Made by a program: the position numbers and the translations under genes. Source: Diadema antillarum (taxonomy: Eukaryota). Taken from it: a stretch of 64,000 bases of DNA. The notes under the pieces are model-generated. The model saw only the letters and a list, made by a program, of their open reading frames with translations. It had not been told where the DNA came from and ran no database searches. Position 1 is the stretch's first letter; each line of letters opens with the position of its first letter. The stretch spans positions 124,001-188,000 of the forward strand of contig NW_027271416.1 of assembly GCF_040938485.1 (NCBI RefSeq). Reading direction: 5' to 3'. This document shows, in pieces, positions 1 to 64,000 of this stretch.

Positions 1-493
1 AATCGGTGCAGAAACACTCTTCATCATCGGTAGGGTGTCTCTTACACTTCCGTCGTCTCTTAAGAGGAACTTTTCCCGAGAGTACCTCACTCATGGCTAC
101 CACTGTGTGAGTAGAGAACGGTGTCCAGCCGGAATGTTTTGAGTCACATAACTTACACATATATTTCCCACAGTCCTGACAGTAGGTAATAGCTGTCGGC
201 TTTTCGTCCATCTCACAAGCTGTGCATGTTGGATTCTTGGTTTTCACTTCGTCCACGAGAGAATTCAGGGGTACGACTGTATGTAACTTACTCACATCTC
301 CATTGGGTAGGGGCGTTTCTTTCCTGCATACAGGGCATGTTATAGCTTGTTGGTTTGGCTGAGTTTGAGAGATGCGTTCCAAGCAGTCTTTACAGAAGGT
401 GTGAGAACAGGCCAGTGATTTGGGTTGGTTGAATAGTGTCAGGCAAATGGGACACTCCAGATTCTGGCTGATGATTTGATGAAACGTTGCCAT
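1..493 (-). CDS. TRIM E3 ligase copy T1, 5' part (RING, B-box1, start of B-box2); continues beyond the left window edge
   Basis: Hand translation from ATG 493 is open to position 2: MATFHQIISQNLECPICLTLF...CSHTFCKDC...CPVC...CTACEMDEKPTAITYCQDCGKYMCKLC...CKRHPTDDEECFCTD. It is collinear with T2-T5. Confidence 0.9.
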   Translation of the reverse strand, partial: MATFHQIISQNLECPICLTLFNQPKSLACSHTFCKDCLERISQTQPNQQAITCPVCRKETPLPNGDVSKLHTVVPLNSLVDEVKTKNPTCTACEMDEKPTAITYCQDCGKYMCKLCDSKHSGWTPFSTHTVVAMSEVLSGKVPLKRRRKCKRHPTDDEECFCTD

Positions 494-1072
494 GGTGTCT
501 GCTTGTCTAATAGCAAAAGATTCAAACAAAACAAAACAAAAACAAATAGCGTTAAACGCACCAACGAATACAAGCAGAAATATGATATTAGCATTTATCA
601 AAATAAAAAGAGAGAAGTTAATGGGAAGCATGGTGTCAAAATTGTTTTGGATTCGTCATAAAGGACGAAGTAATGAAGCGCAATTTAACAGATTTGTGTA
701 TCTTTGTTCACTATACCTGTTTTCTGTGAATACTTTAAAACCGGGCTCAATAAATTTGATTTTGATGGTTCATTTGAATGGAGGAGATCACAATTTGTGT
801 AAACTTCGATGGGATGCTTTCATTATTTTCGTCCAGTATAACATCCTTCATTGTTGATTTGAATACATTATACTTACTCAATTCTGGATGACTCCCCACC
901 CCCCCCCCCCATCATCCCCAATAACACACCCACAAATCAAGCAAATGAATATTATTCAAACAACAAACAAAAGAGAAAGAATAGTGACGGATTTTTTTCA
1001 ACATAGGCCCACTTCCTTGCTTCTGCTGAGGCAAATGCCAAATTTTTGCTTCCAAGTTATCAGATACCAACA

Positions 1073-1400
1073 ATGCAATTCATTTCAATTCATTTCAATT
1101 CAATTCAATTCAAATCAATTTATTCGGAATTTTCTGCATTGAGCATAATTTTACAAATGATATACAGTCATTTTTTTTTTCTAACACAATAAGGAATACA
1201 GTCTACGTACATCCAAACATTATTGAAGTTTATGCGTACAATGGGCCGTTAACAGATTGAAGAATAGAAAAAGAAAACACGTCGTTGGGAGCTACTCAGG
1301 ATAGTGTGAAACAGATGGTCTGACTGAATTATGGTACATGTATTGTGGGATGCAATTCTTTAATTGGTATTTGTGGGAATGAGTAAAATTTGTGGGAATT
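1073..1400 (-). mobile_element. 3' end fragment of a non-LTR retroelement (AATAAA plus (TTGAA)n tail)
   Basis: On the minus strand, AATAAA (1119-1124) is followed by a (TTGAA)n tail (about 1076-1117). The same block lies at about 56995-57330 and was not seen in units T2-T4. The 5' boundary is approximate. Confidence 0.55.
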
Positions 1401-59532: not shown

Positions 59533-62500
59533 TTGCAACGTACTACACAAAATACATGGCCCCAGAACAACCATTCTCAACTTTGCACTCAAATCCTCAT
59601 GACTCATAACAACGATCATCCTGACCAGGGTATCATAAGTAATCACAGTAAATACTACACTATTTCGGATTTCAATAATATGTTCAAATCTTCACTTGAT
59701 TCCACTGCAAGTCATGTTAATAATTCCCGTAGTAATTCCACAAATAGGAATGATGACACTAATTATAACCCCATTAAAGATTTTAGCTTATTCCACTGGA
59801 ATGCTAGAAGCTTAAACAAAAATTTTGATTCATTTGAACTACTTCTTCTTTCTTTACAAAATTTTCCCTTTTCCGCAATCGGTATAACTGAAACTTGGCT
59901 AGGGCACACGTCTCCAAATTTGTTTAGTCTTGATAGATATAAAATATTTCGCTCTGATCGTAAGAGAGGTAGAGGGGGAGGGGTAGCCCTATATATATAT
60001 AACGAATTGCGAGTAAAAATAAGAACTGATATTGATATTGAAGGTTGTGAAAGCCTGTTTGTGGAAATCATTAATGATAAAATGAAAAATAAGATAATTG
60101 GTGTTATATACAGGCCACCAAATCATAAAACCGAAATGCTTTTAGAAAATTTTGATGAATGCCTCAACACGATTACACAAGAAAATAAGGAAATTTATAT
60201 TATGGGCGACTATAATATTGACATGACGAAAATAGATACTTTAGCGGTAAAATTAAAAACTATTCTTTTTTCATATGCTTTCCATTCCCATATTGATAAC
60301 CCAACAAGAATATCCCAAACATCTAAAACCTTGTTGGATAATATTTTTTCTAATAACTTTTCTGTAAATAAATTTATTAATGGTATTTTATATTATGATA
60401 TATCTGATCATTTACCGATATTCATTATTCTTCGTTATTCTGAAAACGTCAAAAGTATTTCAAAACCCAGGCCGATAATGTACAGAAAAGAATCAGACGA
60501 GAATATTGAATTACTTAATCTTGATTTAGTGAAGGAAGAATGGCAAGAAGTGTATCTTCAAAATAACGCCGATAAAGCTTATGATATTTTCCTAGATAAA
60601 CTTTTATATTATTATCGAAAAAACATTCCTTTAGTTAAGAAAAACACACGCAGAATGAACAAACATCCCTGGATTACAAAGGGAATCATCAATTCAATAA
60701 AAACCGGTAATAAATTGTATAAACTGGCGATTACTACCCACAATACAAAACATTTTACAGATTACAAAAAGTATAGAAATATACTCAGTAATTTGATTCG
60801 TATTTCTCGTAAAATGTATTATTCTGATAAGTTTGATAATCAAAAGGATAACGTAAATGGTTTATGGGAAACTATATATGAAATAACAGGTAAAAATAAT
60901 AAGGAAACATTGTCCGTTTTTTATAATGACAACAAAGAACTCATAAACCCTGATGAAATATCTGACGCTTTTAACTCATACTTCGTAAATATTGGCCCCC
61001 AATTAGCTTCAAAAATAAAAAACAAACATGTTCATTCAAACTTTACTGAATTTCTTCCACCAAACTGCGACAAATCCCTTTTCTTTACCCCAACAGATGA
61101 GGAAGAAATACTGGAGATTGTTAACAGATTAAAACCAAGTAGATCTAGTGGCCATGATGAAATAAGTGTTTATATACTGAAGAAAATCATCAAACAAATA
61201 ACCACACCTTTATCTTACATTTTCAATCTTTCACTGTCTTCTGGAATATGCCCAAACTCATTAAAAATTGCGAAAGCAGTTCCAATTTTCAAAAGAAAAG
61301 ACGACCCTTCTCTTTTAACAAATTATAGACCAATATCGTTATTACCTAGTATTTCTAAAATTCTGGAAAAAATTATTCATAAACGCCTGTACATTTTTCT
61401 TCATGTAAATGACCTACTTATACCTAATCAGTTTGGATTTAGAAAGGGCCATTCCACTGATTTAGCTATAATTCAATTGTTAGATAAGATTACTGAATCT
61501 TTTGCAATAAAAAACATTTTATAGGAATTTTCATGGATTTATCAAAGGCTTTTGATACCATAGATCATGATATATTAATTTACAAATTAAAAAGATATGG
61601 TATTCGTGGTTTAGCACTTTCTTAGATTATTGATTATTTATCCAACAGAAAGCAATATGTACTATTTAAGTCATCTAAATCTCCGAATTCTAATATTGTA
61701 TGTGGTGTTCCCCAGGGATCAATTCTTGGCCCCCTACTGTTCCTTGTATATATTAATGATATAATAAATACATCTAAAACTCTTAAATTTATACTTTTTG
61801 CGGATGATACTAATATTTTTTACTCCCATGAGAACCTTGAAACACTGTTTAATACTCTGAACACGGAAATAGACAAAGTCTCCCGATGGTTTATATGTAA
61901 TAAATTATCCCTTAATGTCTCTAAAACAAATTTTATACGTTTCAAACCTACTGCTTCACAGAACATTAACAGCAGTTATAATATCAATATTGATGGATTA
62001 TCTTTAACTGAAGTAAGATTTACTAAATTCTTAGGAATCACAATTGACTCGAGTTTAACTTGGAACGATCACATTCATAATATCCACACGTCTGTCTCAA
62101 GAACTGTAGGAGTTTTATATCGACTGAAAAACTTCATTTCTCAAAATTCCCTGACTATTCTATACAATGCATTGATCTTACCACATATCACATACTGCAA
62201 TATCGCTTGGGGAAACTGTGGCTCAACTAAAATTAATCCAATTTTTACTCTCCAAAAACGTGCTGTACGTTTGATTACCAATTCCCGTTACTTATCCCCA
62301 TCCAATCCCCTATTTCGTCAACTAAAAACATTGAAAATTGAGGATCTTCACACCTTTCAAACTGCTGTTTTTATGTATAGATATACATTTAATTGTCTTC
62401 CAAAATTTTTTGATGGCTTCTTCACTCCAAATTTCACCGTTCATTCATATCCAACACGTCAGTCGTCCGATTACCATCTCGAAAACCCCAGAATCATTTT

Positions 62501-62639
62501 AGCTCAAAAATCATTAAAGCACAATGGACCAGATATTTGGAATTCTTTACCCCCTAATTTAAAACAACGTACGTCGTTGAACATTTTCAAACGAGAACTA
62601 AAAAACACCCTCATAATCCAGTATACTTCTGACACATAA
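59533..62639 (+). pseudogene. LINE ORF2 (APE endonuclease plus reverse transcriptase), disrupted
   Basis: APE motifs WNARSL, ITETWL, YRPP, GDYN and SDH; RT motifs YRPISLLP, DLSKAFD, VPQGSILGP and FADD (61797-61808). Frameshift near 61507 and an in-frame TAG at 61623-61625. Confidence 0.9.
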
Positions 62640-64000
62640 ATATTCATACCACCTGGTCAACAAACACCCTAAACAATGAGTTCACGGCCATAACTGAAGT
62701 AACATTCACCTCATCACACTGATACACAAAATAACACTCAACGTACAAACCAAGATTCATCCCAACACAATGCACACCGCACTGCACCGCACGCCCTTCG
62801 CACAATTACTTCCCACTCAGTGAGTGGCAAGATTTTCTTTATGTATCTCTTCGTTGAGCCCATTGCACAATTACCCCCCACTCAGTGAGTGGCAAGATTT
62901 TCTTTATGTATCTCTTTACCTGGGGCCATCATCCTCGTCAAGCTTAGCTTATGATGATGGTCCCCTGCATTTCATTTTTATCATTTCCTGTTGCTTCCTT
63001 TCATATATGATATTCGTTCTTGAAAAAAAAAAGAAAATGTATGTAAGATCCAAACGTTACGAATATTAGCTGTGTAAATGACTATGTAAGTATTTTGTTG
63101 ATTTGTTGATTTGTATTGATTTTGAAATGCAGAAATAAAAACTGAACTGAACTGAACTGAACTGAACTGAAATATTTGACACCAGGGGGAAAGTAACTCG
63201 TGCAACAAAAGAAAGAGAACAAGGAAGAGGACGAGGACATCGTCATAAAAATTTACGGATACAAACATCCCGAGGTGTTAATACTCTCATTTATCTCTGC
63301 CCATTACAAGCTTATTCACGCGCTAGTATAACTGTGTCTATATAGTTTACAAAGTATTACCAATTTTAACTCTGCTGATGTTTCTAAAATTTTGTTGTCA
63401 TGTTAACAACTTTCGGGGACTCAAATTTGTTGAAATGCATCTTAAGGAAGGGAGTATGTCTAACATCATTATTTCATGAACCAATTAGCTGCACATGACA
63501 ACAAACGCTCTTTTAGTAAATTTGTCACTTATCTGCATACACTATAAAAGAGTTCAAAAATAACCATGAATAGCATGCACCTCTCTCTTGTGTTTCAGTC
63601 GTTTAAGTTATGAGGAGGACGTGATTGAGCAAGCCACTGTTAATACAGTAAAAAGGGAAGTTCTAAGGAGGTCTGACCTGTACCAAGTTCTACTCATGTC
63701 TCCCAATTCCTCAAACGTCGATCGTTCTACACTAATTTCGGATAAGTCCTAAGGCGATGGTCTATATTCAATTCAATTCAATTTTTATTTCATTTTTCGA
63801 CAAGAAAATATAGACATCAATTTTTTGGGAGATAATGATAAATACATTTTAAACAAAAGCAGCAAAATCGTAACAGAAATGTTGACCTAACAAACAAGGG
63901 AGAATCAATCGTATAAGCTTATTTGATAAACATGCGACAAATTTTGTAACACTTAGTGTCACGCACGAGTAACATGCATGTGTGTATATCGTTTCCTATG

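What the first reader, a model, noticed from the sequence alone, without database searches (positions are those of the whole stretch)
1..64000. pmar1/micro1-type homeobox genes co-amplified with a TRIM-propeller gene as one repeating cassette
Seen: in the T2, T3 and T4 units the order is conserved 3' block, TRIM, about 3 kb upstream region, homeobox exon-1 relic, spacer, all on the minus strand. Two intact homeobox genes sit between T1 and T2. Known: pmar1/micro1/hbox12 is a tandem multigene family acting at the top of the echinoid double-negative gate, and echinoderm TRIMs expand in tandem arrays. Inference: the duplicating unit here is TRIM plus homeobox, so copy-number turnover of a master developmental repressor may be coupled to birth-and-death of an immune-type gene. 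I do not know of this linkage being described, but cannot check the literature.
Basis: partly seen in the sequence, partly recalled or inferred. Interest (0 to 1): 0.8.

Follow-up and report, generated by a model that had tools for sequence, protein, structure and literature searches.

The report
Diadema pmar1–TRIM mixed tandem array
In the sea urchin Diadema, part of the tandem cluster of pmar1 genes (the repressor that starts skeleton-cell specification) is interleaved with TRIM-NHL ubiquitin-ligase genes; dead pmar1 first exons show the two were once copied together, but the recent copying multiplied only the TRIM genes and a homeobox fossil.

Summary
The window is Diadema antillarum contig JBFRCO010000528.1, positions 124001-188000. 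All these genes lie on the minus strand:
- five single-exon TRIM genes (T1 cut by the window start, T2-T4 intact, T5 frameshifted);
- two intact two-exon homeobox genes (H1, H2) between T1 and T2;
- a degraded homeobox exon 1 about 3.1-3.4 kb upstream of each of T2, T3 and T4.

The homeobox genes belong to the Pmar1/Micro1 family. The TRIMs are RING, B-box, coiled coil and NHL propeller.

All three relics, and one in D. setosum, share the same nonsense codon and the same downstream junction. The homeobox therefore died once, before the two species split, and the TRIM-plus-fossil unit was then copied. T2 and T4 are a recent copy pair (98.3% identical over 10.5 kb). Units are mosaics, so the trees agree only at young nodes.

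The coupling is not general:
- another stretch of the same contig has four homeobox genes and no TRIM;
- the TRIM family has over 100 members on many chromosomes, without relics in the two copies sampled outside the cluster;
- the sampled S. purpuratus and Lytechinus pmar1 arrays have no TRIM.

"Immune-type" is unsupported. The scan noted this mixed array before, on the adjoining windows.

The parts
2..493 (-). T1: 5' part of an intact TRIM gene that runs off the window start (RING and first B-box)
   Evidence: The translation equals the N-terminus of the annotated 618-aa protein P0053. tBLASTn gives 81% identity to T2.
494..2922 (-). T1 upstream region and spacer. It is colinear with the region between TRIM and relic in units A-C, and with the T5 upstream region.
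   Evidence: 494-1418 matches 56409-57352 at 90.5%. 1406-2615 matches 23531-24701. 2096-2922 matches 33784-34553.
5358..5828 (-). H1 exon 2: last third of the homeodomain plus the C-terminal region with two MSVDFLSRSSR motifs
   Evidence: AG acceptor and open frame. 99% identical to D. antillarum protein P0001 and 42-48% to named Pmar1/Micro1 proteins.
6396..6596 (-). H1 exon 1: start codon to homeodomain residue 46, followed by a GT donor
   Evidence: Pfam Homeodomain E 1.3e-10. Splice sites read.
10267..10737 (-). H2 exon 2
   Evidence: 66% amino-acid identity to H1 exon 2.
10977..12809 (+). LINE reverse-transcriptase fragment inside the H2 intron
   Evidence: Pfam RVT_1 E 2.7e-32.
13269..13469 (-). 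H2 exon 1. Its N-terminal arm differs from H1 (PRPRRKTRFT against RRRRPTVFT).
   Evidence: The H2 type is conserved in D. setosum.
15503..26166 (-). Unit A: boundary element 15503-15677, 3' block 15720-19700, T2 19701-21554, upstream region, relic R2 24953-25191 (TAG at 25055-25057), spacer
   Evidence: 15720-26165 matches 39537-50009 at 98.3%. Pfam RING and B-box. Relic alignment.
26167..36551 (-). Unit B: boundary element 26167-26346, 3' block 26342-29656, T3 29657-31507, upstream region, relic R3 34582-34734 (TAG at 34694-34696; 5' half replaced by a microsatellite), spacer
36596..37536 (.). Tandem repeat of 174 bp, 5.5 copies, inserted between units B and C
39392..49977 (-). Unit C, a recent copy of unit A: T4 43531-45384, relic R4 48767-49015 (TAG at 48879-48881)
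   Evidence: Ks between T2 and T4 is 0.003.
49978..57352 (-). Unit D: 3' block 50148-54546 and the T5 pseudogene 54547-56408 (8-bp insertion at 56355-56362 shifts the frame in the RING). Its upstream region resembles that of T1. Its homeobox partners H1' and H2' lie beyond the window end.
59533..62639 (+). LINE (endonuclease plus reverse transcriptase) inserted between T5 and the next homeobox pair
   Evidence: Pfam Exo_endo_phos and RVT_1.
63170..64000 (-). Start of the next copy of the T1-to-H1 spacer. It shows a higher-order repeat of about 61.7 kb.
   Evidence: 1420-2255 matches 63170-64000 at 96%. The homology continues in L001 at 94-97% with H1' and H2'.

Best explanation
This is a lineage-specific mixed tandem array made by segmental duplication and unequal crossing-over.

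Ancestral unit (inferred): an H1-type pmar1 homeobox gene lay a few kb upstream of a single-exon TRIM-NHL gene, on the same strand.

Order of events:
1. In one copy the homeobox was killed. A CAG-to-TAG nonsense change hit homeodomain helix 1, and about 3.5 kb was lost, including the intron and exon 2. This happened before D. antillarum and D. setosum split.
2. That TRIM-plus-dead-exon unit was then copied. The T2 and T3 lineages separated at Ks of about 0.29.
3. T2 gave rise to T4 very recently (Ks 0.003).
4. Gene conversion or crossing-over with breakpoints inside units kept reshuffling the pieces.

Intact H2-H1 pairs, each followed by a TRIM (T1 intact, T5 broken), flank the relic block and repeat at about 61.7 kb.

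Shown: the anatomy, the single origin of the relics, their neutral decay, the family identities, and the conservation in two Diadema species. Inferred: the order of events and the recombination mechanism.

The linkage is physical hitch-hiking. Nothing here shows a functional link between the two genes.
For: Layout:
- Direct repeats with a period of about 10.6 kb, and a 98.3% identical pair of 10.5 kb.

Single origin of the relics:
- R2, R3, R4 and the D. setosum relic share the TAG codon and the same sequence after the exon end.
- Homology to the H1 locus resumes about 30 bp after each relic, at the equivalent of position 2918-2922.
- No exon 2 is present in the relic units.
- The relics form one clade at 91/90 support, ordered (R3,(Ds relic,(R2,R4))).
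- Ka/Ks between R2 and the Ds relic is 1.7 on 16 changes, against about 0.05-0.3 for H2 exon 1 between copies and species. H1 exon 1 shows only 3-6 changes between species, too few for a ratio.

TRIM history:
- ((T2,T4), Ds ortholog) has 100/100 support.
- Ks is 0.29 for T2-T3, 0.11 for T2 and its Ds ortholog, and 0.003 for T2-T4.
- Identity along the units is mosaic.

D. setosum has the same layout:
- H2-H1-TRIM (L002) and relic-TRIM-H1 (L005).

Family context:
- The window's TRIMs sit in an 18-member clade, almost all from the pmar1 chromosome or contigs, within a family of more than 100 members.
- Pmar1 identity.
- NHL fold.
Against: - The base of the TRIM clade is unresolved.
- T3's coding sequence groups with non-relic TRIMs. 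Holding the relic-bearing TRIMs together costs 12.8 log-likelihood units (AU p 0.065). Unit history therefore cannot be read cleanly from the TRIM tree.
- The relic clade is not resolved as sister to the H1 type. It is only closer by identity (77-83% against 70-80%).
- The 98.3% pair lies within the range of sea-urchin allelic divergence, so an assembly duplication is not fully excluded.
- No expression data exist. The three runs found are DNA unitigs.
- The camarodont comparison rests on one 21-kb locus per species.
Confidence: 0.75

Rival explanations
1. One reading: functional pmar1 copy number and TRIM birth-and-death are coupled. On this view recombination between TRIM-bearing units, or selection on TRIM copy number, currently drives gain and loss of working pmar1 genes.
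For: - Intact H2-H1 pairs are embedded between directly repeated TRIM units. Any unequal exchange between those units would add or remove a pair.
- A higher-order repeat of about 61.7 kb carries both gene types.
- The array is still active, as the T2/T4 pair shows.
- The interleaving is shared by two species.
Against: - The only resolved duplications of TRIM units copied a homeobox that was already dead.
- H1 and H1' are 97.4% identical, while the flanking T1 and T5 are about 91% identical upstream and only 71% identical in the propeller protein. T1 is sister to D. setosum genes, not to T5.
- Record positions 26.6-47.6 kb hold four homeobox genes and no TRIM.
- TRIM copies outside the cluster expand without a homeobox.
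Confidence: 0.2
2. Assembly artefact: the near-identical units A and C, and perhaps the 61.7-kb repeat, are two haplotypes of one locus placed in tandem by the assembler.
For: - Divergence of 1.7% over 10.5 kb is within the usual sea-urchin heterozygosity (my own knowledge).
- The read contigs show two letters at many places of unit A.
Against: - The copies are internal to a 513-kb contig. They are separated by a different unit (B, 84% identical in its TRIM) and a tandem repeat.
- The high-identity block ends exactly at the unit boundaries.
- The independent D. setosum chromosome assembly also has several interleaved units.
- The relic-bearing units A and B are clearly paralogous.
Confidence: 0.07
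3. The exon-1 relic was kept because it now works for the TRIM gene, as a 5' exon, promoter piece or non-coding RNA.
For: A relic has persisted a few kb upstream of the TRIM since before the species split: 3.1-3.4 kb in D. antillarum and about 6 kb in D. setosum.
Against: - The start codon is lost in R2 and R4.
- There are one or two in-frame stops.
- D. setosum has a 22-bp deletion.
- The 5' half of R3 is replaced by a microsatellite.
- Ka/Ks is about 1.7.
- Branch lengths are 0.09-0.17, against 0.02 or less for the live exons.
- Only about 40 bp upstream of the exon is retained.
Confidence: 0.05

Closest known systems
hbox12/pmar1/micro1 multigene family of euechinoids (S. purpuratus, L. variegatus, P. 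lividus, H. pulcherrimus)
   Same: - Paired-class homeodomain split by an intron after residue 46.
- Two-exon genes.
- N-terminal MAD.
- Two C-terminal (M/F)SVDFLSRSSR motifs and an HPYVF tail.
- Many tandem copies (PMC5370098).
   Different: - In the sampled S. purpuratus and L. variegatus arrays, copies follow one another at about 6 kb and 3.1 kb with no TRIM between them.
- In Diadema, part of the array is interleaved with TRIM genes and dead half-genes.
- Two divergent types, H1 and H2, are conserved across species.
- PMC5370098 mentions unrelated flanking genes but omits them from its figure.
TRIM-NHL proteins (Brat, Mei-P26, TRIM2/3, TRIM71/LIN-41)
   Same: RING, two B-boxes, a long coiled coil and a six-bladed NHL-type propeller. 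The match to the Mei-P26 NHL domain has TM 0.80 and rmsd 2.8 A.
   Different: - There is no filamin domain.
- No Pfam NHL repeat reaches threshold. Only a weak SGL hit is seen.
- The genes are intronless.
- The family has more than 100 members in Diadema, spread over many chromosomes. The classical TRIM-NHL genes are few and conserved.
Segmental-duplication arrays that carry neighbouring unrelated genes and truncated 'half-genes'
   Same: - Direct repeats.
- A passenger fragment with a shared inactivating lesion.
- Mosaic identity from gene conversion.
- A recent near-identical pair.
   Different: The passenger here is a fragment of a gene at the top of the echinoid skeletogenic network. I know of no description of that linkage, and none turned up in the library search.

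Membership tests
Pmar1/Micro1/Hbox12 | Paired-class homeodomain | tested here: met
   Pfam Homeodomain E 1.3e-10 on exon 1 alone. WFQNRR opens exon 2. The homeodomain aligns with Sp Pmar1 and Hp Micro1.
Pmar1/Micro1/Hbox12 | Two exons, with a phase-0 intron inside the homeodomain (after residue 46) | tested here: met
   GT donor after ...RIQ and AG acceptor before VWFQNRR in both H1 and H2. tBLASTn gives the same exon split in S. purpuratus and L. variegatus.
Pmar1/Micro1/Hbox12 | C-terminal region with two repeated (M/F)SVDFLSRSSR motifs and an HPYVF tail | tested here: met
   These columns are invariant or nearly invariant across the Diadema, S. purpuratus, H. pulcherrimus, Scaphechinus and L. 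variegatus proteins.
Pmar1/Micro1/Hbox12 | Closest relatives outside the genus are named Pmar1/Micro1 | tested here: met
   Exon 2: Scaphechinus 'Micro1/Pmar1 related', Hp Q5TLG4 and Sp 'paired class homeodomain repressor', at E 1e-25 to 1e-15. N-terminus plus homeodomain: 61-63% identity to Sp and Hp family members.
Pmar1/Micro1/Hbox12 | Separation from the non-echinoid Phb group | not tested
The word-based searches returned none.
Pmar1/Micro1/Hbox12 | Early micromere expression and repression of hesC | not testable with these tools
   No RNA run holds the stretch.
TRIM-NHL (RING, B-box, coiled coil, NHL propeller) | RING and B-box zinc fingers | tested here: met
   Pfam zf-RING_UBOX E 3e-10 and zf-B_box E 4e-6, with two stretches. 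The Cys/His ligands are invariant across 60 family members.
TRIM-NHL (RING, B-box, coiled coil, NHL propeller) | Long coiled coil after the B-boxes | tested here: met
   The model has one helix spanning residues 188-297. phmmer aligns residues 21-301 to the TIF1-beta RBCC region.
TRIM-NHL (RING, B-box, coiled coil, NHL propeller) | C-terminal six-bladed NHL propeller | tested here: met
   By fold: pLDDT 90-95 over residues 360-617. Best domain matches are the NHL domains of Mei-P26, Brat, TRIM2/3/71 and Thin, with TM 0.64-0.80. By sequence the evidence is weak: only SGL/DFPase hits.
Immune-type (diversifying) TRIM | Positive selection, or immune expression or induction | tested here: inconclusive
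   Pairwise Ka/Ks is 0.34-0.46 gene-wide and 0.36-0.53 in the propeller. Site-wise tests and expression were not done.
Tandem segmental-duplication cassette (TRIM plus homeobox as one unit) | Shared duplication nodes for both components | tested here: inconclusive
   The trees agree for (R2,R4)+Ds relic against (T2,T4)+Ds TRIM. The T3/R3 pairing is not recovered in the TRIM tree (AU p 0.065). H1/H1' and T1/T5 are incongruent. Identity along the units is mosaic.

The most novel reading that the evidence does not exclude
Intact pmar1 pairs sit between long, directly repeated TRIM units that are still recombining. Unequal exchange seeded by TRIM homology may therefore make pmar1 dosage polymorphic among Diadema individuals. 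Alternatively, or in addition, the TRIM-NHL genes may fall under the early-embryo regulatory landscape of the cluster. In that case a fast-expanding ligase family would be tied to the gate that specifies skeletogenic cells.
Probability: 0.15. Interest if true: 0.6.

Novelty: new variant of a known kind. Interest (0 to 1): 0.35.

Why it matters
pmar1 sits at the top of the euechinoid skeletogenic network, and its copy number and expression differ between species. Diadema belongs to an early-branching euechinoid lineage, so its cluster layout bears on how the family grew.

This locus gives a dated, readable record of that growth:
- two conserved paralog types;
- a homeobox-only stretch;
- a mixed stretch in which a neighbouring TRIM-NHL gene became the main cargo of duplication, leaving pmar1 half-genes behind.

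Practical consequences:
- The half-genes and the interleaved TRIMs will confuse copy counts based on homeobox or exon-1 hits.
- The shared nonsense codon is a convenient marker for tracing unit ancestry across diadematoids.

The result does not show a functional link between the two families.

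Tried and rejected
- **Exact look-up of T2.** My first query included the upstream ORF extension and was not on record. Homolog searches served instead.
- **Expression.** No RNA run was found. The three runs that hold the stretch are short DNA unitigs covering coding and non-coding parts alike. They say nothing about transcription and cannot separate paralogs from alleles.
- **Deep synteny.** TRIM relatives lie on the pmar1 chromosome in S. 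purpuratus (3.3 Mb away) and L. variegatus (16.7 Mb away). That is too far to count as linkage.
- **Boundary element as a transposon.** The roughly 150-bp boundary element occurs only at unit boundaries and in the D. setosum cassette, so I rejected a generic mobile element.
- **Spacer upstream of the relics.** Weak matches to the H1 3' flank (4110-5055) are mostly microsatellite and were not interpreted.
- **Coding content in the 3' block.** None was found.
- **Literature.** No paper in the library holds both pmar1 and 'tripartite motif'. The two papers that hold both Diadema and pmar1 do not describe the cluster.
- **Big profile search.** Not run. The word searches settled the family, and the operators had asked for restraint.

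Full report
**Identity of the window**

The window has no N and about 37% G+C. A locus fetched for a homologous protein matches window 58029-64000 at 100%. This places the window at positions 124001-188000 of Diadema antillarum contig JBFRCO010000528.1 (513,450 bp). I confirmed it independently through.

**Anatomy**

Everything relevant lies on the minus strand. Self-BLAST, ORF lists and tBLASTn give five single-exon TRIM genes:
- T1: its first 162 codons are at 2-493, identical to the N-terminus of the annotated 618-aa protein P0053.
- T2: 19701-21554.
- T3: 29657-31507.
- T4: 43531-45384, with a protein identical to T2.
- T5: 54547-56408, whose RING is broken by an 8-bp insertion at 56355-56362.

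Two intact two-exon homeobox genes lie between T1 and T2:
- H1: 6396-6596 and 5358-5828.
- H2: 13269-13469 and 10267-10737, with a LINE reverse-transcriptase fragment in its intron.

Upstream of T2, T3 and T4, at 3.07-3.4 kb, lie fragments of homeobox exon 1:
- R2: 24953-25191.
- R3: 34582-34734.
- R4: 48767-49015.
- They match at tBLASTn E 1e-15 to 1e-20 and 77-83% DNA identity.

Each unit reads as follows. A boundary element of about 150 bp comes first. Then come a non-coding 3' block of 3.3-4.4 kb, the TRIM, the upstream region, the relic and a spacer. The period is about 10.6 kb. It missed only T5 and a higher-order repeat of about 61.7 kb. In that repeat, 1420-2255 matches 63170-64000 at 96%, and the homology continues beyond the window with a further H1/H2 pair.

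**What the genes are**

Evidence that the homeobox genes are Pmar1/Micro1-family members:
- Exon 2 finds about 20 Diadema paralogs. Outside the genus it finds proteins that their sources name Micro1/Pmar1-related (Scaphechinus), Q5TLG4 (Hemicentrotus) and 'paired class homeodomain repressor' (S. purpuratus, H. erythrogramma), at 42-48% identity.
- The annotated sister copy P0001 has an N-terminus and homeodomain 61-63% identical to S. purpuratus and Hemicentrotus family members.
- An alignment of database proteins shows the shared MAD start, the homeodomain, both C-terminal (M/F)SVDFLSRSSR motifs and the HPYVF tail.
- The intron lies after homeodomain residue 46.

Separation from the non-echinoid Phb group was not tested.

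Evidence on the TRIM:
- It has a RING and two B-boxes.
- The model (mean pLDDT 85) shows a 110-residue helix and a C-terminal six-bladed propeller.
- The best domain-level matches are the NHL domains of Mei-P26 (TM 0.80, rmsd 2.8 A), Brat, TRIM2, TRIM3, TRIM71 and Thin.
- By sequence the propeller is seen only weakly, as SGL/DFPase hits.

So 'TRIM-propeller' is right. 'Immune-type' is unsupported, because the nearest folds are RNA-binding developmental regulators. Pairwise Ka/Ks is 0.34-0.46.

**The relics have one origin**

Aligned with live exons from both Diadema species, R2, R3, R4 and a relic found upstream of the T2 ortholog in D. setosum (L005 3798-3923) share two derived features:
- The same CAG-to-TAG change in the WQLERL codons of helix 1 (25055-25057, 34694-34696, 48879-48881).
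- The same sequence downstream of the exon end.

Sensitive BLAST shows that about 30 bp after each relic, homology resumes with the H1 locus at 2918-2922. About 3.5 kb is therefore missing, including the intron and exon 2.

Further damage differs between copies:
- R2 and R4 lost the start codon and gained a second stop.
- R3 lost its 5' half to a microsatellite.
- The D. setosum relic has a 22-bp deletion.

The relics form one clade at 91/90 support, ordered (R3,(Ds relic,(R2,R4))). They evolve without constraint. Ka/Ks between R2 and the Ds relic is 1.7. Relic branches are 0.09-0.17, against 0.02 or less for the live exons.

The homeobox therefore died once, before the two species split. What multiplied afterwards was a TRIM with a fossil attached.

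**History of the TRIMs and the test of co-duplication**

Family context:
- The TRIM family has more than 100 members at 60-92% identity, on at least nine D. setosum chromosomes and many D. antillarum contigs.
- In a 90-protein tree, T2, T3 and T5 fall in an 18-member clade (SH-aLRT 95). It is made almost wholly of genes from the D. setosum pmar1 chromosome and the two D. antillarum contigs that carry pmar1 genes.
- The base of that clade is a polytomy.

Where the trees agree:
- ((T2,T4), D. setosum ortholog) has 100/100 support. This mirrors ((R2,R4), Ds relic).
- Ks values give the order: T2-T3 0.29 and T2-T5 0.28, T2 and its Ds ortholog 0.11, T2-T4 0.003.

Where they do not:
- T3's coding sequence groups with T5 and with non-relic D. 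setosum TRIMs at 93/96. Forcing the relic-bearing TRIMs together costs 12.8 log-likelihood units (AU p 0.065).
- T1 is sister to two D. setosum genes rather than to T5. Their homeobox neighbours H1 and H1' are nevertheless 97.4% identical over 4.7 kb.
- T1 against T5 falls from 90% protein identity at the N-terminus to 71% in the propeller.
- Unit A against unit B runs from 97-98% in the 3' block, through 95%, 86-90% and 81% along the TRIM, to 58-84% upstream.

The units are mosaics, reshaped by gene conversion or by crossing-over inside units. The two gene types share the young nodes but not a single common history.

**How general is the linkage?**

D. setosum shows the same mixed layout:
- H2-H1-TRIM at OZ188189.1 about 5.73 Mb (L002).
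- Relic-TRIM-H1 at about 5.78 Mb (L005).

Evidence against a general link:
- Record positions 26.6-47.6 kb of the D. antillarum contig hold four homeobox genes and no TRIM.
- A D. setosum locus at 5.64-5.66 Mb holds an H2/H1 pair with no TRIM in reach.
- A cluster-clade TRIM 4.5 Mb away on the same chromosome shares only about 1.4 kb of its own upstream region and has no relic.
- A TRIM on another chromosome shares only its coding sequence.
- The sampled S. purpuratus and L. variegatus pmar1 arrays are pure, with spacing of about 6 kb and 3.1 kb. Their nearest sampled TRIM relatives lie 3.3 and 16.7 Mb away.

Each camarodont sample is only 21 kb, so absence there is provisional.

**Literature**

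- PMC5370098 describes the P. lividus family as two-exon genes on several scaffolds, 'flanked by unrelated genes' that its figure omits.
- No paper in the library holds both pmar1 and 'tripartite motif'.
- The two papers that mention both Diadema and pmar1 do not describe the cluster.

**Expression**

Expression could not be tested. No RNA run holds the stretch. The three runs that do are DNA unitigs covering coding and non-coding parts alike.

**Verdict**

This is a real, conserved mixed array, not described in the literature I could search. It is best explained by ordinary segmental duplication in which a neighbouring TRIM-NHL gene and a pmar1 gene were once copied together. The later amplification carried only a dead pmar1 exon.

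The proposed coupling of pmar1 dosage to TRIM turnover remains possible for the intact pairs that sit between TRIM units, but it is not shown.

I left out one step: joining the two exons of H1 or H2 into one protein for search or folding. The scan had already noted this mixed array on the adjoining windows (s1-225698, s1-220796).

Noticed in passing
window 54547-56408: T5 is a TRIM pseudogene. An 8-bp insertion at 56355-56362 shifts the frame between the first two RING cysteines. The long remaining ORF starts at a GTG.
   Followed up: yes
window 6396-6596 versus 13269-13469: H1 and H2 differ in the N-terminal arm of the homeodomain (RRRRPTVFT against PRPRRKTRFT). They show no detectable similarity in promoter or intron. 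Both types are conserved in D. setosum (Ks between H1 and H2 is 0.35-0.54).
   Followed up: partly
L005 17815-19053 and L002 904-1368 (D. setosum): Some D. setosum copies look dead. The L005 H1-type copy starts with GTG instead of ATG and has an in-frame stop in exon 2. The L002 H2-type copy also has a stop in exon 2.
   Followed up: no
window 22829-23015 (and its copy at 46654-46840): This short stretch upstream of T2/T4 has summed contig depth hundreds of times that of its flanks in three DNA runs. It is probably a piece of a very abundant repeat. It was not found in the other loci fetched.
   Followed up: partly
window 36596-37536 and 58591-59381: Tandem repeats of 174 bp (5.5 copies, with a long G run) and 394 bp (2 copies, 100% identical). 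The second lies just upstream of a LINE with endonuclease and reverse-transcriptase domains (59533-62639).
   Followed up: no
window 38286-38846: A 186-aa ORF on the plus strand with proline- and glycine-rich ends and no Pfam match. It is probably spurious, inside repeat-rich spacer.
   Followed up: no
L008 (D. antillarum contig 26.6-47.6 kb): The homeobox-only part of the cluster holds two further divergent pmar1 types (226 and 228 aa, 62-64% identical to H1 in exon 2). They lie on the opposite strand to their neighbours, so the cluster holds head-to-head pairs as well as direct repeats.
   Followed up: partly
window 29657-31507 (T3): T3 has an open frame, but a cysteine of the first B-box is replaced by serine (YCQDSG instead of YCQDCG).
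   Followed up: no
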